IMG/VR virus record: IMGVR_UViG_3300047548_001122 | Location: 124,001-188,000 of that record | Reading direction: 5' to 3' (one strand) | DNA length: 64,000 nucleotides | In this document: positions 4,618-38,093 of the stretch, piece by piece | Layout of the letters: each line of letters opens with the position of its first letter | How positions within the stretch are numbered: the stretch's first letter is position 1 | Position numbers and translations under genes: made by a program | The notes under the pieces: model-generated | Told to the model about the DNA's origin: nothing | Databases searched by the model: none | Seen by the model: only the letters and a program-made list of their open reading frames with translations

Positions 4618-5060
4618 AATTAATAAATTTAATTTTAGAAGGCAAAGTTATTGAAGCAAGAGAGTGTTTCGAAAACTTAATGCTTCAAAAAATAGAAGAA
4701 AAATTAAAAGAAGAAAAAGAAACAATTAAAGAATTGTTTTTTGAAGATGAAGATTTAGTCGAAGCTGTAAAAAGAAGAAACCCAAACATTATACGTATGG
4801 GTAGAGTACAAAAGATTCGCCGCAGAATACGCAGAAATGCTAAAGGTAAAATTGTTGTACAAAAAAATGTAAAACGTTCTGGTATCAAAGGTTACAGAAT
4901 GTCTGGCACTACTGTAAAAAGAATACCAGCTGTAGAAAGAATTAGAAAAGCACGTTTATTAAAACGTTCTTGGAAAACAACTAGAAGAGCTAAATTACGC
5001 CGTACGTTATTGAAAAGAAAAATGTCAATGCGTAGGCGTGCATCGATAGGATTAAGATAA
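4614..5060 (+). CDS. gp68: Prohead core protein (gp68-like)
   Basis: Very basic C-terminus ending KRKMSMRRRASIGL as in gp68 family; upstream of gp21. Confidence 0.75.
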   Translation: MKLINLILEGKVIEARECFENLMLQKIEEKLKEEKETIKELFFEDEDLVEAVKRRNPNIIRMGRVQKIRRRIRRNAKGKIVVQKNVKRSGIKGYRMSGTTVKRIPAVERIRKARLLKRSWKTTRRAKLRRTLLKRKMSMRRRASIGLR

Positions 5061-5061
5061 A

Positions 5062-5433
5062 ATGCCATACGAAATCGTAAACAACAAAAGAAGTAAATCA
5101 GTAATTCGTGTAGTAGGTAATACAGCTACTACAATTACTCTTGCAAGTTTGTCATCAGGAGCGGATGAAACTGTTACTAATGCTTCTATAACACATGTAA
5201 TGTCACAATCGGACGGCGCGTGGAAAGTTTATAGAGGAGATAATACTAGTGGTGAACTGGTATTGGATTTAACAGGTGCTGGTAATTGCGATTGGCCTTT
5301 GGCTCAATATGATATTGCCATTGCAAATAGTTCATCATCAAATATTCACGTAACAAATTCTGGTGCTGGCGGCACAATTATTTTAGTTGTAAATAAAATT
5401 GCCACTTATTCACCAGCTTTAACAGGAATGTAA
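5062..5433 (+). CDS. Hypothetical virion-associated protein
   Basis: 123-aa ORF tightly packed between gp68 and gp21. Confidence 0.6.
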   Translation: MPYEIVNNKRSKSVIRVVGNTATTITLASLSSGADETVTNASITHVMSQSDGAWKVYRGDNTSGELVLDLTGAGNCDWPLAQYDIAIANSSSSNIHVTNSGAGGTIILVVNKIATYSPALTGM

Positions 5434-13363: not shown

Positions 13364-14434
13364 ATGAAATTATGTATACTAGGTGATACTCACTTCGGTG
13401 CTCGAGGTGATTCTTTAGACTTCCACAAATATTTCCAAAAATTTTACGACCAAATATTTTTTCCTTATTTGTTAGAGAATAATATTAAAGTCGTTGTTCA
13501 AATGGGCGATTTGTTTGATCGCCGAAAGTTTATCAATTTCAATTCACTTTACCTTTGCAGAAAATACTTTTTCGATAAACTAAGAGATCACGATATACAA
13601 CTATACGCTTTAGTTGGTAATCATGATGTTGCATTTAAAAACACACTTGAGGTAAATTCACCAAACTTATTATTAAAAGAATATGACAATGTATTTTTAA
13701 TTGAAAATTTTTCGACAGAAAAATTCGATGGTGTCGATATTGATATAGTGCCTTGGTTGTGTGCCGACAATGAAGAAGAAATCTTCCAAAAAATAAAAAA
13801 CAGTAAATCACAGATATGTTTTGGGCATTTTGAAATAGATGGTTTCGAAATGGATAGAGGCAATGTTCATCAAGGTGGGCTTGACAGAAAGACATTATTC
13901 AAGTATGATGTAGTATTAAGTGGTCATTTTCACCATAAATCGTCATCAGACAATGTTACCTATGTTGGCACTCCTTATGAAATGACCTGGTCTGATTTTG
14001 ATGACCCAAAAGGGTTTCACATTTTCGATACCGACAATCGTGAATTACAGTTCGTCAAAAACACATTTGTCATGTTCAACAAGATTGTTTATGATGATGC
14101 ACAGACAGATTTTGAATTTTGGAAAAAATACGATTACGATAAATTAAAAGATTCTTATGTAAAAGTAATCGTGTTAAACAAACAGAATCCTTTTTTATTT
14201 GAACATGTTTTAGATAATTTATATAAAGTTGGACTTAGTGATCTTTCTATAGTTGAAGATTTTAGTGAAAACATAATGGGTGATGATAGTGATATTATTG
14301 ACCAAGCTGAAGATACTATGACCATACTTTCTAAGTATATTGATAATTTAGAAATCGATATTGAATCTGATAAATTGAAAACGCTTATGAGAGAACTTTA
14401 CATTGAGGCTTTGAATACTGAGGTGTCTGACTAG
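13364..14434 (+). CDS. gp47: Recombination endonuclease subunit (Mre11/SbcD-like)
   Basis: GDTHFG, GDLFD, GNHD, GHFEI, SGHFH phosphoesterase motifs. Confidence 0.97.
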   Translation: MKLCILGDTHFGARGDSLDFHKYFQKFYDQIFFPYLLENNIKVVVQMGDLFDRRKFINFNSLYLCRKYFFDKLRDHDIQLYALVGNHDVAFKNTLEVNSPNLLLKEYDNVFLIENFSTEKFDGVDIDIVPWLCADNEEEIFQKIKNSKSQICFGHFEIDGFEMDRGNVHQGGLDRKTLFKYDVVLSGHFHHKSSSDNVTYVGTPYEMTWSDFDDPKGFHIFDTDNRELQFVKNTFVMFNKIVYDDAQTDFEFWKKYDYDKLKDSYVKVIVLNKQNPFLFEHVLDNLYKVGLSDLSIVEDFSENIMGDDSDIIDQAEDTMTILSKYIDNLEIDIESDKLKTLMRELYIEALNTEVSD

Positions 14435-16146
14435 TGTTACTCTTTAGAAATATAAAGTGGAAAAACCTGTTAAGCACAGGTAACAACTTCACAGAAATAA
14501 AACTAGACAATCAAAGTAATACACTTATTGTTGGTGAGAACGGTTCAGGTAAATCTACTTTACTTGATGCCTTATGCTTCGCACTTTTCGGAAAAGCATT
14601 TAGAAACATAAACAAACCAAACCTTATCAATTCAATTAACGGTAAAGATTGTGTAGTTGAAGTTACATTTGATACAAATAATAAGTCTTATAAAATTATA
14701 AGAGGTATTAAACCCAACCTTTTTGAAATTTATTGTAATAACGAGTTATTAAATCAAGAGGCTGCGTCTAGAGATTACCAAGATTATCTGGAAAGATTTA
14801 TTCTGAAGATGAATTATAAATCTTTCACGCAGATTGTGATTCTAGGTTCAGCATCATTCACACCCTTCATGCAATTGTCTGCATCTGATCGCAGATCAAT
14901 CATCGAAGATTTGTTAGACATACAGATTTTTTCTACGATGAATAATATCGTAAAAGAAAAAATTTCAAAGAACAAAGAAAACTCTACGATAAAAAAGAAT
15001 GATATTGAATTATATTCACAAGAATATAAATTAAAGAAAGAACACTTAGACAAATTAAATTTAGATACTGATGCTAAGGTGACCGAGTATGAGAATGAAA
15101 TACAAACTAATAATGATGCCTTGGAAACCTTACATGCGGAAGTTACAGGACACACAGCTAGTATTGAGGAATTACAAACTGCCGTTTCGAACAAGTTGGA
15201 CATTGAAACAAAAGTCAAAAAGATATCCAAACTTGAATCGCAGATTGAAAGCAATATCACCAAATTCAACAAAGATATCGATTTTTTCCGACATCATGAT
15301 GATTGTCCAACGTGCAGACAAACCATTGCCGTGGAGATTAAAGAAAAAGAAATCGAGTCACTTACTGGAAGAGTCGAAGAATCTAAGCAAGGCCTTACTG
15401 AACTTGAAACTAAACTCAATGAAGAACAGCAAAAACTTAATGAAATAGTGGAGAAACAAAAAGAAATACAAAGAATTCAGGTTGAAATTGCTACTAAAAA
15501 TGCTTCGATTACGGGCATAAACAAGTATATTAGTAAGTTGCAGTCTTTAATACTTGAACTTAAAAACAATAAAACCAATACACAGAAAGAAGAAGATACT
15601 TTAAAGGAGTTGAAGTCTGCACTAAACAAAATGCAGGAAGAGTTGAAAGAACTTATTGAAGAAAAAACTTATTATGAATTCGCTTCTAATCTTTTAAAAG
15701 ATACTGGTATTAAAACCAAAATTGTAAAACAGTATTTACCAATCATAAACAAATTAGTAAATAAGTATTTGGCTTCTTTAGATTTCTTTGTCAATTTTAA
15801 TTTAGATGAATCGTTTAAAGAAACAATCAAGTCAAGACACCGAGATGAATTTAGTTATCATAATTTTTCTGAAGGTGAAAAACAAAGAATTGATATGGCA
15901 CTAATGTTGACATGGAGAGCGATTGCAAAGTTGAAGAACTCTTCAAACACAAACTTGTTGATATTGGATGAAACGTTTGATTCTTCGTTAGATTCTACTG
16001 GTACAGATGAATTGATGAAACTGTTACACATGTTAGAAGGTGTAAATTTATTTGTTATCTCACATAAAGGCGATATACTACAAGATAAGTTTATAAATGT
16101 AATACGATTTGTGAAAGAGAAGAATTTTTCTAGGATGGTAAAATGA
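14434..16146 (+). CDS. gp46: Recombination ATPase subunit (Rad50/SbcC-like), GTG start
   Basis: GENGSGKST, CPTC zinc hook, FSEGEK signature, LILDE, ISH. Confidence 0.97.
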   Translation: MLLFRNIKWKNLLSTGNNFTEIKLDNQSNTLIVGENGSGKSTLLDALCFALFGKAFRNINKPNLINSINGKDCVVEVTFDTNNKSYKIIRGIKPNLFEIYCNNELLNQEAASRDYQDYLERFILKMNYKSFTQIVILGSASFTPFMQLSASDRRSIIEDLLDIQIFSTMNNIVKEKISKNKENSTIKKNDIELYSQEYKLKKEHLDKLNLDTDAKVTEYENEIQTNNDALETLHAEVTGHTASIEELQTAVSNKLDIETKVKKISKLESQIESNITKFNKDIDFFRHHDDCPTCRQTIAVEIKEKEIESLTGRVEESKQGLTELETKLNEEQQKLNEIVEKQKEIQRIQVEIATKNASITGINKYISKLQSLILELKNNKTNTQKEEDTLKELKSALNKMQEELKELIEEKTYYEFASNLLKDTGIKTKIVKQYLPIINKLVNKYLASLDFFVNFNLDESFKETIKSRHRDEFSYHNFSEGEKQRIDMALMLTWRAIAKLKNSSNTNLLILDETFDSSLDSTGTDELMKLLHMLEGVNLFVISHKGDILQDKFINVIRFVKEKNFSRMVK

Positions 16147-16916
16147 ATTTTCAAGAATATCTAACGTGGTATAGAGATGTCGTGGATAAAGAAGTTGAGG
16201 GATGGTTTTATCCAATCGACATAATTGTTATGTATGGTATATTGAAAGAGATTCAAAGAAATATTTCAGGTGATATTTGTGAGATTGGTGTAGCTTATGG
16301 TAAAAGTGCTATTGCTATTTCCAATTTTAAAAGATCAGAAGATAATTTATATCTCTATGATATTTTTCCCGAAGAAGTTTTTTCCAAATGTTTACTTAAC
16401 ATTAAAAAGTTTGGTACAGATGATAATTTAGTTTGGAGAATAGAAGATACTACCAATCTAGAACACAGTCAAAAACTTTTTGATAAACGTTTAAGATTCC
16501 TACACATAGATGGATGCCATGAACACTCTGCCGTATTAAGTGATTTACAGTTTTTTAGTCACTACATGGTAGATCAAGGAATAATAGTGCTTGACGATTT
16601 CAATGATTACGAGTATCCTGGTGTCAACAGTGCTGCCATAGAATTTAGTTTGGCAAAATATAATGTTAAAAACTGGAGAGTGTTTGCTATTGGTGATAAT
16701 AAGGCTTACATGTGTCAAAAAAAATATGTAACTACTTATCAATCTCTGTTAGCAATGTTTATGAAAAATGCATTACAAACAATGAACGTTCCTTTTCCTT
16801 TACCTTTAGCACTTCGAGAGATGCTTGATGTAAATGTTTTAATGTGTGATTCCCGTGAAGATTGGGAATATAAAAGGATTATAGAAAATATAAATGATAA
16901 ACCTAGAATAGGATAA
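16143..16916 (+). CDS. Class I SAM-dependent methyltransferase (Methyltransf_24-like)
   Basis: ICEIGVAYGKS, FLHIDGCHEH..V.SDL, GIIVLDDF. Confidence 0.8.
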   Translation: MNFQEYLTWYRDVVDKEVEGWFYPIDIIVMYGILKEIQRNISGDICEIGVAYGKSAIAISNFKRSEDNLYLYDIFPEEVFSKCLLNIKKFGTDDNLVWRIEDTTNLEHSQKLFDKRLRFLHIDGCHEHSAVLSDLQFFSHYMVDQGIIVLDDFNDYEYPGVNSAAIEFSLAKYNVKNWRVFAIGDNKAYMCQKKYVTTYQSLLAMFMKNALQTMNVPFPLPLALREMLDVNVLMCDSREDWEYKRIIENINDKPRIG

Positions 16917-16920
16917 AGTT

Positions 16921-17505
16921 ATGAGTGAAATTTTAACACTTGATACTTCCGAAGGCATAACCAAATTTAAGGAAGAAAAACCTCAACTATTAGTTGTATA
17001 TTCTGATAAGCATCCAATGTTGAATGAAGTGATGCCTGAATATACTGAACCTCTACCAAATAAAGATATGTATGATTTGGTAAAGAATATGAAAGAAACC
17101 ATGAAGATTTATGGTGGTGTAGGACTTTCAGCTAATCAGTGTGGCATAAGAAAAAGAGTTTTTGTTATGGGTACAGATCAATTTCAAATTGCATGTATCA
17201 ATCCTAAAGTCTTAGAGGTGTCTGAAGAAAAAGAAAAACAAATAGAAGGATGTTTGTCTTTCCCTGCAATGTTTATGAAAGTCGAAAGACCAAAATCAGT
17301 TTTTGCTGAATATACTGATGAGAATGGAGAAGTTCATAGAGAATGGTTTCAAGGATTAACTGCACGTTGTTTTTTACATGAAACCGATCACATGAATGGA
17401 ATAAAATATACAAAATATGTTGGTCCAGTGGCCATTCGTATGGCTCAACAAAAACAGTTGAAAAAAATTAAAACTGTTAAAAGAAGAATGAAAAATGGCG
17501 TATAG
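16921..17505 (+). CDS. def: Peptide deformylase
   Basis: GVGLSANQCG, EGCLS, HETDH. Confidence 0.95.
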   Translation: MSEILTLDTSEGITKFKEEKPQLLVVYSDKHPMLNEVMPEYTEPLPNKDMYDLVKNMKETMKIYGGVGLSANQCGIRKRVFVMGTDQFQIACINPKVLEVSEEKEKQIEGCLSFPAMFMKVERPKSVFAEYTDENGEVHREWFQGLTARCFLHETDHMNGIKYTKYVGPVAIRMAQQKQLKKIKTVKRRMKNGV

Positions 17506-18772
17506 TTTTGATCCTAAAGATGATGTTGAAACTCAGTGGCAAAAGTGGCAAGACTCGGGTATTGAATATCAAAATATAGATGTCGATCAGTTACGTGAGA
17601 AAACCATAAAAGAACTTACGTATGTGTCTGGCATGGATGTTAAAGAATACACACTGTTTCAAAAGTGGTGTGAGGTTCAAGAAAAATATCCTACGATGTT
17701 GGTCAACGACCTATGGGAAGGCGAAAAGAAAGTTCTCATAGATGATGAACAAAGAAGGTCGATTGAAGAGATTAAAAATAATTTTTGGGTACCTAGTACA
17801 CCTGAAGATTATCTAAACTTACAACCAGAATTAATTTACACAAATAAAGAAGATAATCTACCAGAGTTATGGAACACTATACGAACATTTTCTTCCACAA
17901 TGAAGAACAACTCGAATATTGGACGTAATTTAAACTTTATTGTTCGTGACAAAGTAACTAAAAAATATCTTGGTGTTATCTGCATTAGTTCCGACTTCTT
18001 AGATTTGACACCAAGAGATAACTTTATTGGCTGGTCCAGAGAATTAAAAACTCAAGGTGGTATGATTAATCATACAGCTATAGGATCAACAATCGTTCCT
18101 TTACAACCTTTGGGTTATAATTATGTGGGTGGCAAATTACTTGCTCTATTGTGTTTGTCTGATCCTGTACAACAGTTATGGGAAAAACTTTACGGAGATA
18201 AATTAGTATCTGTAACTACTACATCATTATATGGTAAAACAAAAGCCGGTGGATTATCACAATACGATAATTTGGATCATTGGTTGCCGATGGGTTTTAC
18301 TTCTGGCTCTGTTTCATTTGAACCTTTGACCGATACTAGATACATGATACGTGAATGGTTGAAAACAAATCATACCAGAAAATATTTTGAGTGGTATGTT
18401 GCAAAGAAACCTTCTGGACAACCACATAAAAGAGATCATAAAAATCGATCTTTAAATTTTACATACACACAGTTAAGCATACCAAAAGAATTGATTCGTT
18501 CTGAACATGCAAGAGGAATTTATTTTTCACCGTTATATGATAAGTCTTGTGAATTTTTACGTGGTGACCATGACGGTAAAAATATGAATAAGTTATTTGA
18601 CACCAGTGTTGAATCGTTGGTTGATATCTGGAAAACTAAACACGCTAAACCGAGAATCAAACAATTGGTAAAAAAAGATAAAGTATCTTATGATACCTTG
18701 TTCTATGATGATTTGTGCTACTTAACTTGGGAAGAAACAAAAGAAAAATACCTTCCACAAGTTGGTCGGTAA
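17495..18772 (+). CDS. DruA/DUF4338-like protein, paralog A (Mom-like GNAT fold inferred)
   Basis: GRNLNFIVRD..YLGVI, PRDNFIGW, IVPLQPLGYNYVGGKLLAL, VTTTSLYG..SQYDNL match the DruA pattern as I recall it. Confidence 0.65.
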   Translation: MAYSFDPKDDVETQWQKWQDSGIEYQNIDVDQLREKTIKELTYVSGMDVKEYTLFQKWCEVQEKYPTMLVNDLWEGEKKVLIDDEQRRSIEEIKNNFWVPSTPEDYLNLQPELIYTNKEDNLPELWNTIRTFSSTMKNNSNIGRNLNFIVRDKVTKKYLGVICISSDFLDLTPRDNFIGWSRELKTQGGMINHTAIGSTIVPLQPLGYNYVGGKLLALLCLSDPVQQLWEKLYGDKLVSVTTTSLYGKTKAGGLSQYDNLDHWLPMGFTSGSVSFEPLTDTRYMIREWLKTNHTRKYFEWYVAKKPSGQPHKRDHKNRSLNFTYTQLSIPKELIRSEHARGIYFSPLYDKSCEFLRGDHDGKNMNKLFDTSVESLVDIWKTKHAKPRIKQLVKKDKVSYDTLFYDDLCYLTWEETKEKYLPQVGR

Positions 18773-18787
18773 TAATAAAAAAGATGC

Positions 18788-18816
18788 TTGACAATTGAAG
18801 AAAGTTCCTATATAAT
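18788..18816 (+). promoter_or_regulatory. Sigma70-type promoter for the tRNA-like RNA
   Basis: TTGACA (18788)-17 bp-TATAAT (18811); no ORF between it and the next promoter. Confidence 0.88.
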
Positions 18817-18828
18817 TGTATCTGAAAT

Positions 18829-18891
18829 GCGGAGAGTCCGAGACAACCTGCCCCCGCAGGTAGAGAGGTTTAACTCCTCTTATCCGCTCCA
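18829..18891 (+). ncRNA. 63-nt mini tRNA-Gly-like RNA with encoded CCA
   Basis: Acceptor GCGGAGA/TATCCGC + T73 + CCA; T-arm AGAGG-TTTAACT-CCTCT; anticodon-like arm ACCTG-CCCCCG-CAGGT; D-arm reduced to GTC-CGA-GAC. Confidence 0.75.
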
Positions 18892-18896
18892 CCCAC

Positions 18897-18963
18897 GTTA
18901 TCAAATTAGCAACAGTTGTTAAAAAGACAACGGCTTGACTTTTCCTTTTTCCTGTGTTATAAT
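18897..18963 (+). promoter_or_regulatory. Extended -10 sigma70 promoter with upstream tandem palindromes (vWA gene)
   Basis: TTGACT (18935)-17 bp-TGnTATAAT (18958); GTTRT-N7-RCAAC at 18897 and 18915. Confidence 0.8.
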
Positions 18964-18991: not shown

Positions 18992-21256
18992 ATGACAACT
19001 TTTACCGCAGAGACTAAATCGCAATTGGCAAAACTCCTTGCCACCGAAAACTTGCGAATTGAACACCAAAAGATTCGTACAGCCCGATTCGATCCAAAGA
19101 ATCGGGTTTTATATTGTCCTATTTGGAAAAATATGTCAGGAGCTCTTTATGATCTTTTGATGGGTCATGAAGTAGGTCACGCTTTGTACACTCCTGCTCA
19201 AGGTTGGCATGATGCGGTTTGCGAAAAGGGTAAAAACTATAAAGCATTTTTGAATGTTATTGAAGATGCTCGAATCGAAAAGAAAATCAAACGGAAATAT
19301 CCTGGTATTCGCAGGTCTTTTGTTACTGCCTATAATGAATTGATGGAAAGAAATTTCTTTGAGATTAAAGGTAAAGACATCAATAAAATGTCCTTCATTA
19401 ATCGATTGAACCTTTTCACAAAATCTTCTGGAACTATTGATATTTCTTTTACTGGTTTTGAAGAAAAACTTGTAGAAGAAGTTATGCGTTGTGAAACTTG
19501 GGATGATGTAATTCGTGTCACTGGTCTTGTTTGGGATTATTCCAAAGATGAACAGTTCGAAATGATGCAAGATTTTGATTTCGATAATTTGGAATTCGAT
19601 GAGGATGGTGAATACGAATTCGAATATGAATTGGAAGAATCTGAAGAAGGTTTCGATTCTGATGATTCGAAGAAAAATGGAAAATCATCTACTCAATCTG
19701 AAGAAAATGGTGAAGAAGGTGAGGGTTCGGGAAATTCTAATAAATTCGACACCGAATCAAATGAAGAGAGTGAAGGAGAAAGTGAATCTTTTTCGATAGT
19801 TCGTAATAAAGAATCTGCTTTAACTAACAAAGATATGTTTCAACCATTCTGTGAAACTGATGATGCGTTTCGTATGAATGAAAATACTCTGCTTGATGAA
19901 AAATGTAAAGAGTATATCTATCTTACTTTGCCTACTCCTGTTTTGAAAAATATTATTACGCCAGCTTCTCGCGTACAAAAACTTTTGGCCGATCATTACT
20001 CTAATCATTTTAACAGAAATGAATTGTTCAATAATTTCAAACGAAAAAATGAACGATACATTTCTTTGCTTGCCAAAGAATTCGAAATGAAGAAGGCGGC
20101 TTCTTGTTACGCAAAAGCTAAAACTTCAAATACAGGAGATATTGACGTATCGAAATTGTACAAATACAAAATTGATGATTCTATTTTCAAAAAGATGATG
20201 AGAATACCAAAAGGTAAATCTCACGGTTTGATTTTGCTTTTGGATAAATCAGGTTCAATGTCAAACAATATGAAAGGTTCTATTGAACAAATTCTAGTTT
20301 TGGCTATGTTCTGTAGAAAAGTAAATATTCCTTTTTCAGTTTACGGATTTGGGAATAATTCTACCGGTTATTGTATCGATAAGGAAGTTGATAACCTCGG
20401 TCGTGATGAAGAGTTTTTCAAACACAAAATTGGTGATGTTTATATGAATGCTGTATTCCTTAGAGAGTACATTAATTCTAGAATGAGTAATGTTGAATTC
20501 AACAATGCTTTGAAAAATATGGTTTGTTTGATGAATGGATTCTCACATAGGTATGGTAGAGATTATCCTCCTGTCGAATGTTTGTCGAATACACCTTTGA
20601 CTGAAGCTATTGTTGCTACCGAAGCAATCACTCAAGAATTTAGAAAAGTAAATAATCTTGATATTGTAAATCTGGTGATTGTACACGATGGTGATGCAGA
20701 TAGCATTTCTCATTATAATACTGGTCGAGATGAAGAAGGATATTCTTTGACTGGAAGATTTTCAACAAGTTATTTTAATGTTCTACTTCGTGACAATAAG
20801 ATTCATTTTGAAGATAAGTTGGAACACGATAGTTTAAATTCTGCTGTTTTGAAATGGTATAAACAAAAAACTGGTGCAAATGTTTTTGGTTTTTTTGTAA
20901 CCGATGATAATGCCAGTAGCATGAACGGTGCTATTTGTAAAAATTTCTACACTGAAAATGAAACTAAAAACTTCTATGATAGAATTGAAAATTATCATGA
21001 AAGAAAAGAAGCTGCAACAGTTCTAGTCAAAAAACTTAAAAAAGAAAAGTTTCTATTGTCGAAAAAACCAGGGTTTAAAAGCTTTTTCATTGTACCTGGG
21101 GGTAGCAATTTGCAGATTGATGATGGCGAACTTGAAATTGATGATACCAAAAAAATTACGGCAACAAAATTGACTAATGCCTTTTTGAAGTATAATAAAA
21201 AACGGCAAGTTAACCGTATTTTGGTTTCCAAATTTATTGACGGTATTGCAGTTTGA
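18992..21256 (+). CDS. CobT-like protein: HEXXH metallopeptidase-like N-domain + vWA domain
   Basis: HEVGHALYT, NVIEDARIE, acidic linker, MIDAS LLDKSGSM, NTPL, HDGD. Confidence 0.8.
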   Translation: MTTFTAETKSQLAKLLATENLRIEHQKIRTARFDPKNRVLYCPIWKNMSGALYDLLMGHEVGHALYTPAQGWHDAVCEKGKNYKAFLNVIEDARIEKKIKRKYPGIRRSFVTAYNELMERNFFEIKGKDINKMSFINRLNLFTKSSGTIDISFTGFEEKLVEEVMRCETWDDVIRVTGLVWDYSKDEQFEMMQDFDFDNLEFDEDGEYEFEYELEESEEGFDSDDSKKNGKSSTQSEENGEEGEGSGNSNKFDTESNEESEGESESFSIVRNKESALTNKDMFQPFCETDDAFRMNENTLLDEKCKEYIYLTLPTPVLKNIITPASRVQKLLADHYSNHFNRNELFNNFKRKNERYISLLAKEFEMKKAASCYAKAKTSNTGDIDVSKLYKYKIDDSIFKKMMRIPKGKSHGLILLLDKSGSMSNNMKGSIEQILVLAMFCRKVNIPFSVYGFGNNSTGYCIDKEVDNLGRDEEFFKHKIGDVYMNAVFLREYINSRMSNVEFNNALKNMVCLMNGFSHRYGRDYPPVECLSNTPLTEAIVATEAITQEFRKVNNLDIVNLVIVHDGDADSISHYNTGRDEEGYSLTGRFSTSYFNVLLRDNKIHFEDKLEHDSLNSAVLKWYKQKTGANVFGFFVTDDNASSMNGAICKNFYTENETKNFYDRIENYHERKEAATVLVKKLKKEKFLLSKKPGFKSFFIVPGGSNLQIDDGELEIDDTKKITATKLTNAFLKYNKKRQVNRILVSKFIDGIAV

Positions 21257-21308: not shown

Positions 21309-21346
21309 GTTTGTATAAATTGATTGATCCTAACGGAGATTATATT

Positions 21347-22537
21347 ATGAGTGGTCGTAACGAAAAACGTCAAAAGTTTCTAAATGCTTTGGTATCAACA
21401 GGTGCCAAAACCGTAACGCTTGATGAAATTAAATCGATTGCAGAAGATTTGAATATTGGTGTTCCCTATTGGTATATCAATGAAGAAGAAAATCGTGTAA
21501 AGCGTGGTGTGTACAAAGTACCATCAATCAAAAATACTACTACAGTTGAAACTGTAGATATGCAAGCTCAAGTTATTCCTATGACAAAAACTGAAAATAA
21601 ATCTGCAAATAGGATTTCTTCTATTGTAACTGATCTTGAAATTGAAAACCTTGTACCCACAAAATACAAGAACTATGTTCCTTTCGGAAATTTTGAAGAT
21701 ATTGTTTCAATCATTCAATCAGAAAGTTTCTATCCAATCTTTATCACAGGTCAATCAGGTAATGGTAAAACAATGTCTGTTGAACAGGCTTGTGCCAAAC
21801 TTGGTCGAAAGTTTGTGTGTGTTTCGATGACACCTGAAACTGATGAAAGTGATTTGTTTGGTAACTTTATTCTTATCAATGGTCAAATGGAATGGCGTGA
21901 TGGTCCTGTAACTGTTGCGGCTCGTCAAGGTGCAGTTCTGTGTATCGATGAAGTTGACTATGGTGCTCAGAATCTTTCCTCTTTGCAGCGTGTACTTGAG
22001 GGTAAACCGTTTCTTCTAAAAAAGAAAAATGAACTAATTGTTCCTGCAAAAGGTTTTACCGTTGTTGCTACTGCTAATACAAAAGGTAAAGGTTCGGAAG
22101 ATGGTCGTTATATGTTTACTAACGTATTGAATGAAGCTTTCCTTGAACGTTTCTTGAATACTATGGAACAAGATTGGCCTCCAGTTAAAGTCGAACGTAA
22201 GATCATCGAAAAAGAATTGGAATCTTCGGGTCGTGCAGACAAAGAGTTTGCTGAAAAACTTGTAACGTGGGCTGATATCATTCGTAAAACCTTCATTGAA
22301 GGTGGTTGTGATGAAGTGATTTCAACTCGCCGCCTTGTGCATATCGCAAAAACTTATGGTGTTTTTGGTGATAAGATGAAGGCAATCAATTTGTGTTTGA
22401 ATCGTTTTGATGAAGATACCAAAATTTCTTTTGGTGATCTTTATACGAAAGTTGATGCGGGTGCTAATACCCAAACTATTATGGCACAAACAATTGAAGA
22501 TGTTGCACCTACGGTAAATGATGAAATTCCTTTCTAA
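21347..22537 (+). CDS. MoxR/CobS-like AAA+ ATPase
   Basis: GQSGNGKT, LCIDEVD, ATANTKGKG, NVLNEAFLERF, ISTRRLVHI; GGAG RBS before ATG 21347. Confidence 0.88.
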   Translation: MSGRNEKRQKFLNALVSTGAKTVTLDEIKSIAEDLNIGVPYWYINEEENRVKRGVYKVPSIKNTTTVETVDMQAQVIPMTKTENKSANRISSIVTDLEIENLVPTKYKNYVPFGNFEDIVSIIQSESFYPIFITGQSGNGKTMSVEQACAKLGRKFVCVSMTPETDESDLFGNFILINGQMEWRDGPVTVAARQGAVLCIDEVDYGAQNLSSLQRVLEGKPFLLKKKNELIVPAKGFTVVATANTKGKGSEDGRYMFTNVLNEAFLERFLNTMEQDWPPVKVERKIIEKELESSGRADKEFAEKLVTWADIIRKTFIEGGCDEVISTRRLVHIAKTYGVFGDKMKAINLCLNRFDEDTKISFGDLYTKVDAGANTQTIMAQTIEDVAPTVNDEIPF

Positions 22538-35329: not shown

Positions 35330-35621
35330 GTATTCCATAGATTATAGGGATGAAAATACCTATTTTACCATACTTGATGGTAAATATCAAAACGTCACCG
35401 TAACTTACTCGCAAACCCAATTCTTTGAAGATGAGGGTTTTGCGAGGTTAAAATTCAATTATAATGTCATAGATTCTTCAACATTTGCCTTAGAACAGTT
35501 GACAGACGATCAAGAATTTGTTATAATGTTAGGTGATATCTTACAAGACTACATTCTAGTGAAGGCAAAAAATCTTGAAACAGTTAGAGACAGTAATTCT
35601 GAAGAACTTGATTTTCAATGA
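35265..35621 (+). CDS. Hypothetical protein at the T4 gp40 position
   Basis: Overlaps uvsX end and gp41 start; AAGGA RBS; identity with gp40 not established. Confidence 0.5.
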   Translation: MKLLMEILCKIFPWMKKQQSPKYSIDYRDENTYFTILDGKYQNVTVTYSQTQFFEDEGFARLKFNYNVIDSSTFALEQLTDDQEFVIMLGDILQDYILVKAKNLETVRDSNSEELDFQ

Positions 35622-36981
35622 AGAGTATACCCGTAAAGTATTTCCTTTCATAAAACACGAATATTTTTCAGATAACGTACACAAAAAATTCTTCAATGAA
35701 GTAAAACGTTTTATTGAAGAATATAAAACTCCTCCTACCTACGAATCACTACTCATCGATTTTACCGAATCTAAAAGATTAACACAAACCGAAGTGAACG
35801 GTTGTGTTGATTTGTTGCGTGAACTAAATTCAAATAAGAATGAAAGTTCCGAAATGGAATGGCTGATTGACCAAACAGAAAAGTTTTGTCAAGATAAAGC
35901 AATCTATAATGCAATCATGAATTCGGTCAGTATTCTTGACCAAAGTGGTGAAGATAAGAAATCTAAAGGTGAGATACCTAAACTTCTCAGTGATGCATTG
36001 GCCGTATCTTTTGATAATCATATTGGTCATGATTATGTAAATGATTTTGATGCACGGTATGATTTCTATCACAAACAAGAAACGCGGATTCAATTTGACC
36101 TTGATATCTTTAATAGGATTACCAAAGGTGGTCTTCCAATTAAAACTCTGAATATCGCACTTGCTGGCACAGGCGTTGGTAAATCTTTGTTCATGTGTCA
36201 CGTTGCCGCATCTTGTATATCACAAGGTAAAAATGTTTTGTATATTACACTTGAGATGGCCGAAGAAAAGATTGCAGAACGTATAGATGCTAATCTTTTG
36301 AATGTAGACTTGAATGAGTTATATACTTTGACTAAAGATGATTATGGTCGAAAGTTTAATCACCTGAAAACCAAACTCAATGGTAAATTAATCATCAAAG
36401 AATATCCGACTGCATCGGCATCAACACTTCATTTCAGAGCTTTGTTGAATGAATTGCAATTGAAGAAGAATTTTAAACCTGATATTGTGTTTATCGATTA
36501 TCTGAATATTTGTTCATCATCTCGTATTAAACCTGGTGCGAACGTGAATAGTTATTCTTATATCAAAGCAATTGCAGAAGAACTTCGTGGTCTTGCAGTT
36601 GAATTTGCTGTGCCTGTTGTTTCTGCTACACAGACAACTAGAAGTGGTTTTACAAATACTGATCCTGGTCTAGAAGATACTTCAGAATCTTTTGGTCTGC
36701 CAGCAACAGCAGACTTTATGTTTGCTTTGATTAGTACTGAAGAACTTGAACAGTTGAATCAGATTATGGTGAAACAGTTGAAGAATCGTTACGGTGATCC
36801 AAATCATTTCAAACGATTCGTTGTAGGTATTGATAGAGCTAAGATGAAATTGTATGATGCTGAACCTGATGCACAGAATGATATTTCAGATTCAGGTCAA
36901 CCAAATGATACACCTCCATTAAATACATTTGGTAATCGTGAGAGTAAATTTAACAAAAACTTTGGCGGAATTAAAGTATGA
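35575..36981 (+). CDS. gp41: Replicative DnaB-like helicase (TTG start)
   Basis: AGTGVGKS, ITLEMAEE, IDYLNI, SATQTTR, SESFGLPATAD, QLKNRY. Confidence 0.97.
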   Translation: MKQLETVILKNLIFNEEYTRKVFPFIKHEYFSDNVHKKFFNEVKRFIEEYKTPPTYESLLIDFTESKRLTQTEVNGCVDLLRELNSNKNESSEMEWLIDQTEKFCQDKAIYNAIMNSVSILDQSGEDKKSKGEIPKLLSDALAVSFDNHIGHDYVNDFDARYDFYHKQETRIQFDLDIFNRITKGGLPIKTLNIALAGTGVGKSLFMCHVAASCISQGKNVLYITLEMAEEKIAERIDANLLNVDLNELYTLTKDDYGRKFNHLKTKLNGKLIIKEYPTASASTLHFRALLNELQLKKNFKPDIVFIDYLNICSSSRIKPGANVNSYSYIKAIAEELRGLAVEFAVPVVSATQTTRSGFTNTDPGLEDTSESFGLPATADFMFALISTEELEQLNQIMVKQLKNRYGDPNHFKRFVVGIDRAKMKLYDAEPDAQNDISDSGQPNDTPPLNTFGNRESKFNKNFGGIKV

Positions 36982-38093
36982 GTTTGAATAAAGATCAAGC
37001 AATTTATTGTGCGAATGTATTCTCAAACTATTTCGATAGATTCGAAAGAATAGATGAATACATGCGTGAACAAAAGTTGTCATCTATGTCAGAGAGGTCA
37101 CCAACACTTTTTGGTATGGGACCTGAAGATGATTTGTTTTCAGACTTCACGGTTTCACCAGAAAAAATGAACTTTGAAGTTGTCGAACTTTCGCAAGAAA
37201 AGTGGGACATTTATTTGAATATGATTTCTTCTCATTCAAACATGACAAGTATTCCTGGTCGCTGCTTGAGATTGGCTGTACTAGAAACTACAACCAATAA
37301 ATGGTGTGGTTTTATTAGACTAGGTTCGCCAGTAATTAATTGTAAACCTAGAAATGAAATGTTGGGTCAAGTGTTCACTCAAACTGAAGGTGGCGCACAG
37401 TTATTTAATCGATGCGCTATCATGGGTTTTGTTATTGTACCTGCACAGCCATTTGGTTATAATTACCTTGGTGGTAAATTGATGGCTGCGATTTGTACTA
37501 CACATGAAGTACGTGAAATGTTGAACAAGAAATATAACATGACAACTTGTTTGTTTGAAACAACCAGTTTATACGGTTCAACTAAGGCTGTATCACAATA
37601 TGATGGCATGAAACCTTATATTCGATACAAAGGTTTGACAGATAGTGATTTTCTTCCTATGTTACATGGTAAAACATACACCGATCTAAAAGAATATATG
37701 GAAGAAATTATTGGTGAACCACTCGCACCAGAAGGTGCTTCTAGTCGTAAACTAAAGATATCAAATGCCATGGTGTCACATATCAATACTGCTTTGAAGG
37801 GTACACCAGAAGGTGCCAAGTTTAAAAAGACCATAGAAAATGCAAAGAATCTGAACGAACAAAAGCGTTACTATGTTTCAGATTATGGGTTTAGTAACAT
37901 GGTTGACTTTGTTAATGGAAAAACAACTAAACTGATTGCTGGTGAAAACTATGAAAAGTTTCATTTGAAAAACATAATTGAGTGGTGGAGAAAGAAAGCC
38001 ATTAACAGATTTGAAACGTTAAAGACTGAGAATAGACTTAGGACAGAGATCGAAGTCTGGACAGGCGAAAAAGAGATTGACATTATTCGGTAG
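36978..38093 (+). CDS. DruA/DUF4338-like protein, paralog B
   Basis: PGRCLRLAV..KWCGFIRLGSP, IVPAQPFGYNYLGGKLMA, ETTSLYG..SQYD shared with 17495..18772. Confidence 0.65.
   Translation: MSLNKDQAIYCANVFSNYFDRFERIDEYMREQKLSSMSERSPTLFGMGPEDDLFSDFTVSPEKMNFEVVELSQEKWDIYLNMISSHSNMTSIPGRCLRLAVLETTTNKWCGFIRLGSPVINCKPRNEMLGQVFTQTEGGAQLFNRCAIMGFVIVPAQPFGYNYLGGKLMAAICTTHEVREMLNKKYNMTTCLFETTSLYGSTKAVSQYDGMKPYIRYKGLTDSDFLPMLHGKTYTDLKEYMEEIIGEPLAPEGASSRKLKISNAMVSHINTALKGTPEGAKFKKTIENAKNLNEQKRYYVSDYGFSNMVDFVNGKTTKLIAGENYEKFHLKNIIEWWRKKAINRFETLKTENRLRTEIEVWTGEKEIDIIR

What the first reader, a model, noticed from the sequence alone, without database searches (positions are those of the whole stretch)
17495..18891. 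Candidate new system: DruA/Mom-like GNAT enzyme coupled to a dedicated mini tRNA-Gly (tRNA-dependent glycyl transfer, possibly DNA hypermodification)
Seen: the 425-aa gene is followed 56 nt later by a separately promoted 63-nt tRNA-Gly-like RNA ending in CCA. Established: GNAT-fold Fem enzymes use aminoacyl-tRNA as donor, and staphylococci keep EF-Tu-avoiding tRNA-Gly species for them. Phage Mu Mom is GNAT-like and its product (N6-carbamoylmethyl-adenine) is formally an adenine-glycinamide. I recall Gly-tRNA being proposed as the Mom donor; this needs verification. Inference: the DruA/DUF4338 motif order resembles Mom, so this phage may encode both a glycyl-transferring enzyme and its own non-ribosomal Gly carrier to modify its DNA against restriction. 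A protein or cell-wall acceptor is the alternative.
Basis: partly seen in the sequence, partly recalled or inferred. Interest (0 to 1): 0.92.

Follow-up and report, generated by a model that had tools for sequence, protein, structure and literature searches.

The report
Phage non-decoding mini tRNA-Gly beside GNAT gene
A group of uncultured marine T4-like phages carries a shrunken glycine tRNA that can no longer read codons but keeps the features needed to be loaded with glycine. It always sits next to an acyltransferase-fold gene of unknown function, so it may be a private glycine carrier for a reaction outside protein synthesis.

Summary
ORF 17495-18772 encodes a 425-aa DruA/DUF4338 protein. 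A consensus sigma-70 promoter follows it, and 56 nt after the stop lies a 63-nt cloverleaf RNA ending in CCA (18829-18891). ARAGORN and Rfam do not call the RNA, but it is real: the block is conserved with sharp edges in relatives, and covariation supports three stems.

It descends from tRNA-Gly. One relative has a canonical tRNA-Gly(UCC) in the same slot, and others have two further reduced forms. All 56 distinct variants keep GCGG...CCGC-U-CCA, which matches the acceptor-end determinants of bacterial GlyRS, and nearly all keep a CC-containing loop. The D arm, T loop and anticodon loop (4-6 nt) are no longer fit for decoding.

Every relative in this clade with enough downstream sequence (78 of 78) has such an RNA after the DruA-like gene.

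The functional coupling is only inferred:
- More distant DruA-like genes lack the RNA.
- One other phage type has the RNA without a nearby DruA-like gene.
- The protein is a generic GNAT fold with no specific similarity to Mom or Fem.

Verdict: the RNA is new and robust; the glycyl-transfer system is plausible but unproven.

The parts
17495..18772 (+). DruA/DUF4338-family gene (425 aa). The model shows an N-terminal helical domain, a GNAT-fold core and a C-terminal helical part.
   Evidence: Pfam DruA E 2.6e-19; PADLOC DruA; PHROG 19197, unknown function. AF2 model pLDDT 95, pTM 0.92. Foldseek PDB hits are nearly all GNAT acetyltransferases but weak (best E 1e-2, prob up to 0.97).
18788..18816 (+). 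Sigma-70-type promoter for the RNA (TTGACA, 17-nt spacer, TATAAT).
   Evidence: 12 of 12 match. A match of 10/12 or better, with the -10 mostly ending 9-12 nt (8-15 in all) before the RNA's first base, is present in 26 of 53 distinct relatives, against 2.5% of background windows.
18829..18891 (+). 63-nt non-decoding tRNA-Gly derivative ('class 1 mini tRNA-Gly').
   Evidence: Fold; conservation; covariation; covariance model hit 89 bits, unique in the window; homology to canonical tRNA-Gly in relatives.
18829..18835 (+). Acceptor stem 5' strand. It pairs with 18881-18887. Pairs 1-4 are invariant G-C, C-G, G-C, G-C; pair 5 covaries (U-A, A-U, C-G).
18836..18844 (+). Remnant of the D arm: an invariant 3-bp hairpin with a 3-nt loop and no G18-G19.
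   Evidence: The class-2 relatives show it as a shrunken D arm of the L068 tRNA.
18846..18861 (+). Anticodon-arm remnant: a 6-bp stem with loop CCCC (18852-18855). In relatives the central 6 nt read CCCCCG or UCCCAA, rarely a 5-7-nt loop containing UCC, ACC or CCC.
   Evidence: 4 of 5 stem pairs carry changes on both sides; loop census.
18864..18880 (+). T arm: a 5-bp stem with a 7-nt loop UUUAACU (U instead of C56).
   Evidence: 3 of 5 pairs carry changes on both sides and the loop is nearly invariant (positions 41-42 and 44-47 invariant, position 43 T in at least 90%).
18888..18891 (+). Discriminator U73 and the encoded CCA end.
   Evidence: Invariant in all 56 distinct variants of all classes.
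18935..18963 (+). Second promoter, for the downstream 754-aa gene (18992-21256; PHROG 459 'peptidase').
   Evidence: 11 of 12 match with TG extension; PHROG.
36978..38093 (+). Paralogous DruA-like gene (371 aa), overlapping the end of a gp41-like helicase gene. No RNA lies beside it.
   Evidence: phmmer E 1.6e-23 to the 425-aa protein; Pfam DruA E 7e-10; PHROG 19197 E 4e-141. AF2 pLDDT 85, and Foldseek again gives only generic GNATs. The covariance model finds no second RNA in the window.

Best explanation
The RNA is a phage gene derived from a tRNA-Gly gene.

Shown: selection has kept a compact cloverleaf, the acceptor end (G1-C72, C2-G71, G3-C70, G4-C69, U73, CCA) and a CC-containing loop. 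The D loop, the T-loop C56 and the 7-nt anticodon loop have been lost, so the RNA cannot decode.

Inferred: it is transcribed early from its own promoter, trimmed by RNase P, and glycylated by the host's alpha2-beta2 GlyRS. It then serves as a glycyl carrier kept out of translation. The neighbouring DruA-family GNAT is the most likely user. It would take glycine from the 3' end and transfer it to an acceptor, as Mom, Fem and L/F-transferase do with aminoacyl-tRNA.

The acceptor is unknown. Phage DNA (a Mom-like protective base modification) is my first guess, because these genes always sit in replication modules. A protein N-terminus is the second guess, because the gene is co-transcribed with and overlaps peptide deformylase.
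For: Descent from tRNA-Gly:
- A canonical tRNA-Gly(UCC) sits in the same slot in L068.
- A canonical tRNA-Gly(GCC) sits next to the mini RNA in L187.
- Class 2 keeps a recognisable shrunken D arm.

Purifying selection rather than decay:
- Stems are 91-99% paired with compensatory changes.
- There are at least three structural classes, and all 56 variants keep an invariant GCGG...CCGC-U-CCA.

The invariant set equals the published GlyRS determinants: G1C72, C2G71, U73, purine 4 with pyrimidine 69, C35 and C36 (PMC10464925).

The conservation pattern (3' end kept, body free to change) is what a donor for a GNAT transferase needs. Mom accepts all three E. coli tRNA-Gly isoacceptors and probably reads only the acceptor end (PMC13219725).

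There is precedent for dedicated carriers. Staphylococcal non-proteogenic tRNA-Gly escape EF-Tu and the ribosome and have UGC in the T loop (PMC7826273). The class-2 mini RNAs also have UGC.

Linkage:
- 78 of 78 clade members with at least 200 nt downstream carry the RNA after the DruA-like gene.
- Of 120 pattern hits in IMG/VR, 114 have the gene directly upstream, 3 sit on contigs too short to tell and 3 have none.
- Linkage survives insertion of a homing-endonuclease gene between the two.

GNAT fold: and PMC10853773.

Genomic context: DruA-like genes lie within replication and recombination modules.

Distribution: the RNA is absent from 185,579 species' genomes and from cultured phages, so it is not a host tRNA.
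Against: - Nothing shows expression, charging or transfer.
- The linkage comes from one clade and could be inherited synteny.
- Mosig, HTVC008M and 52 other loci with DruA-like genes (roughly 40-63% identity) have no tRNA-like gene within 2.5-3 kb.
- The L187-type phage has the RNA between gp45 and gp44 with no DruA-like gene in the 15 kb held. The unknown neighbour there is a membrane protein, not a GNAT.
- There is no specific similarity to Mom, Fem or L/F-transferase.
- The family keeps a conserved Q-P-x-G-x-N-x-x-G-G-K segment after beta-4, where GNATs bind the CoA pyrophosphate, so an acyl-CoA donor is not excluded.
- One GlyRS study concludes that the enzyme needs the arms and the L shape (PMC10464925), so charging of a reduced RNA is not assured.
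Confidence: 0.38

Rival explanations
1. Decoy or sponge, independent of the DruA-like gene. The glycylated (or uncharged) mini tRNA soaks up a host factor that attacks tRNA-Gly or Gly-tRNA-Gly. Candidates are GNAT toxins of the TacT/AtaT2 type, which acetylate Gly-tRNA-Gly, or a tRNA nuclease. Because the RNA cannot decode, this would spare translation.
For: The conservation pattern (acceptor end plus Gly identity, body variable and fast-evolving into several classes) also fits an arms-race decoy. TacT and AtaT2 target Gly-tRNA-Gly through the acceptor end (PMC13219725). The RNA occurs without an adjacent DruA-like gene in L187-type phages, next to a normal tRNA-Gly. Many DruA-like genes have no RNA.
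Against: No toxin or nuclease target is known in the (unknown) host. It does not explain the 78 of 78 adjacency, nor why adjacency persists across a homing-endonuclease insertion. An anticodon-nuclease decoy should keep the anticodon loop, which is lost here.
Confidence: 0.22
2. The RNA is the substrate, not the donor. The DruA-like GNAT uses an acyl-CoA to modify the mini tRNA, either on the glycyl amino group (as TacT does) or on the conserved loop cytidines (as TmcA makes ac4C). This would produce a modified RNA with a regulatory or inhibitory role.
For: A conserved P-loop-like segment follows beta-4. tRNA-directed GNATs (TmcA, TacT, AtaT2, GmvT) appear among the top Foldseek matches of both paralogs. 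The loop cytidines are invariant.
Against: Those matches are no better than matches to ordinary GNATs (E 0.02-0.2). No downstream role can be named. Most DruA-like genes have no such RNA.
Confidence: 0.1
3. A decaying tRNA-Gly pseudogene, or merely an RNase P/processing signal or transcript-stabilising structure between two genes, with no activity of its own.
For: tRNA genes are common and mobile in T4-like phages. A canonical tRNA sits in the same slot in one relative. No strong terminator follows the RNA, so read-through into the next gene is possible.
Against: Compensatory changes and near-perfect pairing in three stems; invariant acceptor end, D remnant, T loop and CCC; an own consensus promoter. 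Neutral decay would break the stems first.
Confidence: 0.06
4. It is still a decoding tRNA-Gly of unusual shape, used in translation.
For: The loop always contains a glycine-type triplet (CCC, UCC or ACC). A few variants have 7-nt loops (L069, L081).
Against: Most variants have 4-6-nt loops without U33. There is no D loop and no C56. ARAGORN and Rfam reject it. Bacterial EF-Tu and ribosomes are not known to use armless tRNAs (general knowledge).
Confidence: 0.03

Closest known systems
Staphylococcal non-proteogenic tRNA-Gly (NP1-3) used by FmhB/FemA/FemB
   Same: These are extra tRNA-Gly paralogues that keep GlyRS charging but are poor partners for EF-Tu and the ribosome, reserved for a GNAT-fold aminoacyl-transferase. 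Their T loop has UGC instead of UUC, as in the class-2 mini RNAs (PMC7826273).
   Different: The staphylococcal tRNAs are full-size with a normal anticodon loop, are cellular, and are said to be known only in staphylococci. Here the RNA is phage-encoded, 63-68 nt, with the D arm and anticodon loop reduced. The neighbouring enzyme is not a Fem protein.
Phage Mu Mom (Pfam PF25680) with host Gly-tRNA-Gly
   Same: A phage GNAT-fold enzyme that takes glycine from Gly-tRNA-Gly and probably reads mainly the acceptor end. It serves as a counter-restriction DNA modification (PMC13219725).
   Different: There is no detectable sequence or profile relation to the DruA-like family, and no Mom homologue in the window. 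Mom uses the host's ordinary tRNAs and has no dedicated RNA.
DruA of Druantia type I (PF14236, DUF4338)
   Same: Same Pfam and PADLOC family. It is predicted to be a GNAT (PMC10853773).
   Different: The phage genes are not beside druB-E. They sit in replication modules of T4-like phages, occur as two paralogues, and have a different N-terminal part: the Pfam match starts at residue 109. The function of DruA itself is unknown.
GNAT toxins TacT/AtaT2 acting on Gly-tRNA-Gly
   Same: GNAT fold. They recognise the glycylated acceptor end of tRNA-Gly, and they appear among the weak Foldseek matches.
   Different: These are small single-domain acetyl-CoA enzymes of toxin-antitoxin pairs. There is no antitoxin here, and the structural similarity is not above that to other GNATs.
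tRNA-like small RNAs with reduced bodies (tmRNA tRNA-like domain, mascRNA, armless mitochondrial tRNAs)
   Same: An acceptor/T-arm 'top half' with a CCA end is retained, and the D or anticodon parts are reduced (general knowledge).
   Different: No Rfam family matches. The identity is Gly, not Ala. The RNA is phage-encoded, and descent from a canonical phage tRNA-Gly is visible among close relatives.

Membership tests
canonical tRNA (tRNA-Gly) | Recognised by tRNA models. Has a D arm with G18-G19, a 7-nt anticodon loop with U33, and a T loop of the U-U-C-R-A type. | tested here: not met
   ARAGORN finds 0 genes in the window. Rfam has no tRNA hit at E<=10. The D remnant is a 3-bp/3-nt hairpin, the loop is 4-6 nt, and the T loop is UUUAACU.
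canonical tRNA (tRNA-Gly) | Evolutionary descent from a tRNA-Gly gene. | tested here: met
   A canonical tRNA-Gly(UCC) lies at the same position in L068. tRNA-Gly(GCC) lies 27 nt upstream of the mini RNA in L187. The covariance model of the mini RNA hits both intermediate forms and the L068 tRNA.
substrates of bacterial alpha2-beta2 GlyRS | Acceptor determinants G1-C72, C2-G71, U73, and purine 4 with pyrimidine 69. | tested here: met
   Invariant in 56 of 56 distinct variants. The determinants are taken from PMC10464925.
substrates of bacterial alpha2-beta2 GlyRS | C35 and C36 presented in an anticodon loop, an L-shaped body, and actual glycylation. | not testable with these tools
   CC is present in the loop of all but one class-3 variant, where it lies at the loop-stem junction, but in a 4-6-nt loop. 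The cited study says arms and L shape are needed. Charging requires a biochemical assay.
DruA / DUF4338 (PF14236) | Match to the family HMM above the gathering score. | tested here: met
   69.9 bits against 27 for the 425-aa protein; 38.9 bits for the paralogue. All 75 aligned homologues match.
Druantia type I defence system | druA together with druB, druC, druD and the DruE helicase. | tested here: not met
   The neighbours are gp46-like SMC, a methyltransferase, peptide deformylase, a 'peptidase' and CobS-like AAA. The element is a T4-like phage.
GNAT superfamily | GNAT fold of the core domain. | tested here: met
   With high-confidence models (pLDDT 95 and 85), nearly all top-50 PDB matches are GNATs, with prob up to 0.97 and TM (target) up to 0.54. 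However E is only 1e-2 to 0.2. Published assignment: PMC10853773.
GNAT superfamily | Acyl-CoA pyrophosphate-binding loop (Q/R-x-x-G-x-G/A) in use. | tested here: inconclusive
   A nearly invariant Q204-P-x-G207-...-G212-G213-K214 follows beta-4. It resembles the motif but is extended. Binding was not testable.
Mom family (PF25680) | Sequence or profile membership. | tested here: not met
   Mom itself hits PF25680 at E 2e-75. None of the 75 DruA-like proteins hits it. hhalign probability is 0.9% against Mom alone and 0.6% against a 6-sequence Mom alignment.
Mom family (PF25680) | Catalytic residues R111, S124, D149, R151 and the HTH-like insertion, in equivalent positions. | not testable with these tools
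   This needs a pairwise structural superposition with the Mom crystal structure. Mom is not among the top 50 Foldseek matches in PDB or BFVD.
aminoacyl-tRNA-dependent GNAT transferases (Fem, L/F-transferase, MprF C-domain) | Specific fold similarity (tandem GNAT or L/F-transferase architecture). | tested here: not met
   None is among the top 50 PDB matches of either paralogue. The model shows a single GNAT core flanked by helical domains.

The most novel reading that the evidence does not exclude
DruA-family GNATs are glycyl-tRNA-dependent transferases that mark DNA. This would include both phage paralogues and, by extension, DruA of Druantia type I. This phage clade has evolved its own non-decoding Gly carrier so that the modification does not compete with translation. 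If so, it would be the first virus-encoded non-proteogenic tRNA and would give Druantia type I a testable self-marking chemistry.
Probability: 0.15. Interest if true: 0.9.

Novelty: new variant of a known kind. Interest (0 to 1): 0.72.

Why it matters
Dedicated tRNAs that carry an amino acid for something other than protein synthesis are said to be known only in staphylococci (PMC7826273). A phage-encoded, drastically reduced version would extend that idea to viruses. It would also show which parts of a tRNA are needed for such a role.

It also gives a concrete, cheap hypothesis for the function of the DruA/DUF4338 family. That family is widespread in marine phages, giant viruses and the Druantia type I defence system, and has no known activity. 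The hypothesis is to test Gly-tRNA as co-substrate, following the 2026 demonstration for Mom.

Practically, these RNAs are missed by ARAGORN and Rfam, so tRNA-derived genes of this sort are invisible in current phage annotation.

Tried and rejected
- ARAGORN and Rfam on the RNA gave no call. I therefore built my own covariance model, R1.
- I looked for the RNA in cultured phages and in one genome per bacterial or archaeal species. Cultured phages gave nothing. The single genome hit was a chance match inside a high-GC coding region.
- I looked for a true Mom homologue in the window and found none.
- Profile comparison of the DruA-like family with Mom alone and with a 6-member Mom alignment showed no relation. 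A search of PDB sequences with the family profile found nothing relevant.
- I asked whether the unknown 341-aa gene near the RNA in L187 is a hidden DruA-like protein. It has no profile, Pfam or PHROG match, and its family alignment shows a membrane and coiled-coil protein. I rejected the idea and did not fold it.
- I looked for tRNA or mini-tRNA genes beside more distant DruA-like genes: 44 IMG/VR loci and 8 loci from other assemblies. There were none.
- The annotation 'methylcarbamoylase mom' on the cyanophage S-SCSM2R homologue could not be reproduced by sequence or fold search.
- I considered tmRNA (G3-U70 alanine identity). The RNA has G3-C70 and ARAGORN reports no tmRNA, so I rejected it.
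- The pseudogene reading is rejected on covariation.
Full report
**What is there.** The window comes from IMG/VR contig 3300047548_001122 (214 kb; locus L003 is 100% identical). It is an AT-rich (34% GC) T4-like marine myovirus. Its nearest cultured relatives are Pelagibacter phages Mosig EXVC030M and HTVC008M, at about 68% nt identity over this gene.

The gene order around the finding is:
- gp46-like SMC ATPase (14434-16146)
- methyltransferase (16143-16916)
- peptide deformylase (16921-17505)
- the 425-aa gene (17495-18772)
- the RNA (18829-18891)
- a 754-aa 'peptidase'/CobT-like gene (18992-21256)
- a CobS-like AAA gene (21311-22537)

The 425-aa protein is a clear member of Pfam DruA/DUF4338 (E 2.6e-19; PADLOC DruA). 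A 12/12 sigma-70 consensus promoter at 18788-18816 ends 12 nt before the RNA. A second promoter follows the RNA.

**The RNA is real.** ARAGORN and Rfam do not call it. It nevertheless folds as a cloverleaf well below shuffled controls (z -3.2). In relatives the conserved block coincides with the RNA to within 2 nt, while the flanks diverge.

On 47 distinct sequences of this class:
- 91% of cells pair.
- Ten pairs show changes on both sides.
- No shuffle reaches the observed covariation, and slid registers fall to 36-50% pairing.
- Acceptor pair 5-68 occurs as U-A, A-U and C-G.
- Four of five pairs of the anticodon-like stem and three of five T-stem pairs covary.
- The acceptor pairs 1-4, the 9-nt D remnant, most of the T loop, U73 and CCA never vary.

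The RNA is 59% GC in a 34% GC genome.

**It is a reduced tRNA-Gly.** A covariance model of the RNA (R1) found weaker matches at the same place in loci that BLAST had missed.
- One of them, L068, is a canonical 74-nt tRNA-Gly(UCC) by ARAGORN.
- L070, L071, L073, L074 and L075 carry a second reduced form of 67-68 nt. Its D hairpin is visibly the shrunken D arm of the L068 tRNA. It has an 8-bp stem with a GUCCA loop, and a T loop that starts UGC.
- L055, L057, L061 and L063 carry a third form with another D hairpin, a UCCC- or ACCC-containing loop and another T loop.
- In a different phage type (L187, L160, L170) the class-1 RNA lies 27 nt after a canonical tRNA-Gly(GCC), between the gp45 clamp and gp44 clamp-loader genes.

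In all there are 56 distinct sequences: 47 class 1, 4 class 2, 3 class 3 and 2 canonical. Every one begins GCGG and ends CCGC-U-CCA.

That invariant set is the published determinant set of bacterial alpha2-beta2 GlyRS in the acceptor arm: G1-C72, C2-G71, U73, and purine 4 with pyrimidine 69. The remaining determinants, C35 and C36, are mirrored by the CC kept in nearly every loop (PMC10464925).

What has been lost is what decoding needs. There is no D loop with G18-G19, U replaces C56, and the loop is 4-6 nt without U33. The two dominant central hexamers are CCCCCG and UCCCAA.

The picture is a tRNA-Gly gene that has repeatedly drifted away from the ribosome while staying a plausible GlyRS and RNase P substrate. 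A conserved A-U precedes the first base.

**Distribution.**
- It hit nothing real in one genome each of 185,579 bacterial and archaeal species.
- BLAST found it in no cultured phage.

**Linkage to the DruA-like gene.** Within the clade whose DruA-like proteins are 76-100% identical to the window's, 78 of 78 loci with at least 200 nt of downstream sequence have a tRNA-Gly-type RNA after the gene: 68 class 1, 5 class 2, 4 class 3 and 1 canonical. The two remaining loci are too short.

Of the 120 pattern hits, 114 have the gene directly upstream, 3 contigs are too short, and 3 are the L187 type. In about ten loci a NUMOD3 homing-endonuclease gene has been inserted between gene and RNA without breaking the pair. 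A promoter of at least 10/12 stands mostly 9-12 nt (8-15 in all) before the RNA in 26 of 53 distinct upstream variants, against 2.5% of background windows.

Outside this clade the link disappears:
- Mosig and HTVC008M (58-61% aa identity) have no tRNA-like gene at the locus.
- Neither do 44 IMG/VR loci of Mosig-like and other lineages.
- Neither do eight loci from other assemblies.

The statistical weight of the adjacency is therefore that of one evolutionary event followed by faithful retention. That is suggestive but not independent replication.

**The protein.** An alignment of 75 diverse homologues (916 cluster representatives at E<=1e-3) gave an AF2 model with pLDDT 95 and pTM 0.92. The model has:
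- an N-terminal three-helix plus beta-hairpin unit,
- a central alpha/beta core,
- C-terminal helices.

Foldseek against the PDB returns no strong match (best E 1e-2). Nearly all of the top 50 are GNAT acetyltransferases, with probability up to 0.97 and target TM up to 0.52. They include malonyl-CoA decarboxylase, TmcA and TacT.

The 371-aa paralogue at 36978-38093 behaves the same way (pLDDT 85). TmcA, GmvT, AtaT2 and TacT are among its weak hits. Aravind and colleagues also list DUF4338 as a GNAT domain (PMC10853773).

In BFVD the only strong relatives are uncharacterised proteins of klosneuvirus-type giant viruses and uncultured phages.

Nothing ties the family specifically to Mom:
- There is no Pfam Mom hit in any member.
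- hhalign probabilities are below 1%.
- No Mom, Fem or L/F-transferase appears in the fold lists.

The authors of the Mom study note that Mom's own co-substrate could not be predicted from structure or from its closest structural neighbours. So this absence weakens 'is a Mom' but says little about 'works like Mom'.

A nearly invariant Q-P-x-G-x-N-x-x-G-G-K after beta-4 sits where GNATs bind the CoA pyrophosphate. An acyl-CoA donor therefore remains possible.

**What the literature adds.** Mom transfers glycine from Gly-tRNA-Gly to N6 of adenine in dsDNA, and the adduct then rearranges. All three E. coli isoacceptors work, Gly-tRNA-Ala does not, and the acceptor end is thought to be what is read (PMC13219725). 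That paper remarks that drawing on the translational pool may be costly and is perhaps mitigated by late expression. A private carrier would be another solution.

The staphylococcal precedent is close in logic. Non-proteogenic tRNA-Gly keep GlyRS charging, bind EF-Tu and the ribosome poorly, carry UGC in the T loop, and are preferred by the GNAT-fold FmhB. They are said to be known only in staphylococci (PMC7826273).

**Most likely mechanism, with status of each step.**
- Shown: a structured, selected, tRNA-Gly-derived RNA with its own promoter, retained next to a GNAT-fold gene throughout one phage clade.
- Inferred from established rules: RNase P maturation, glycylation by host GlyRS, and exclusion from decoding.
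- Inferred from adjacency and precedent only: the DruA-like enzyme takes the glycyl group.
- Guess: the acceptor.

DruA-like genes of marine T4-like phages sit in replication and recombination modules:
- after gp46 in this window,
- overlapping the gp41-like helicase for the paralogue,
- after UvsW in L259,
- as a tandem pair before DNA polymerase in L262,
- between clamp-loader genes in S-SCSM2R.

They lean towards DNA or replisome proteins as the acceptor. The overlap with peptide deformylase suggests protein N-termini as an alternative.

I put the carrier-plus-GNAT reading at about 0.38, the independent decoy reading at about 0.22, 'RNA is the enzyme's substrate' at about 0.1, and pseudogene or processing signal and decoding tRNA well below 0.1.

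**Comparison and novelty.** The RNA is not a member of any Rfam family and fails the canonical tRNA tests, but it is a descendant of tRNA-Gly. The protein is a member of DruA/DUF4338 and of the GNAT superfamily, but not of Druantia type I as a system and not of the Mom family.

I found no paper describing a phage-encoded reduced tRNA-Gly or any link between DUF4338 and tRNA. I rate it a new variant of a known kind (non-proteogenic tRNA serving a GNAT enzyme). The RNA part is solid and the system part is hypothetical.

Noticed in passing
L001 about 5310-5335; L002 about 4846-4870: Mosig EXVC030M and HTVC008M have, in the slot where this clade has the mini tRNA, a conserved ~20-nt hairpin (GCTGTGCGA..TGACGCA) followed by a T run. 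It is not tRNA-like and may be a terminator or another small element.
   Followed up: partly
L010 4264-4728 (minus strand), and about ten other loci: A NUMOD3 homing-endonuclease gene is inserted between the DruA-like gene and the mini tRNA. The pair stays together across the insertion.
   Followed up: partly
L262 187-2651; L263 127-2591: Two DruA-like paralogues (457 and 363 aa) lie in tandem just upstream of DNA polymerase B in another T4-like phage. This suggests the two paralogues work together. In the window they are 18 kb apart.
   Followed up: no
window 35575-38093: The second DruA-like gene (36978-38093) overlaps the stop of a gp41-like DnaB helicase gene (35575-36981).
   Followed up: partly
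L187 11484-12509: A 341-aa predicted membrane and coiled-coil protein lies between gp44 and gp62. It has about 8,000 or more homologues in marine metagenomes (7,981 of the 8,000 candidates scored) and no Pfam or PHROG family.
   Followed up: partly
BFVD hits A0A3G4ZXG3, A0A5K0UAJ3, A0A3G4ZRA1: The closest structural relatives of the phage protein are uncharacterised proteins of klosneuvirus-type giant viruses (Faunusvirus, Yasminevirus, Dasosvirus). Two of them exceed 1,100 aa.
   Followed up: no
L203 2204-3325 (Synechococcus phage S-SCSM2R): A homologue of the second paralogue is annotated 'methylcarbamoylase mom' in GenBank. Sequence and fold searches here do not support that name.
   Followed up: yes
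L251 2992-3801 (Methylophilales phage Melnitz EXVC043M): A genuine Mom homologue (32% identity to Mu Mom) exists in a marine T4-like phage related to the pelagimyophages. Mom-type chemistry is therefore present in this phage group.
   Followed up: no
L257 3001-4389: A DruA homologue in a cellular assembly (GCA_038920065.1) sits next to a resolvase and an Mrr-type restriction gene, in a mobile-element or defence-island context.
   Followed up: no
window 18788-18816 and 18935-18963: Two near-perfect sigma-70 consensus promoters lie within 150 nt, one for the RNA and one for the next gene. No strong intrinsic terminator lies between them.
   Followed up: partly
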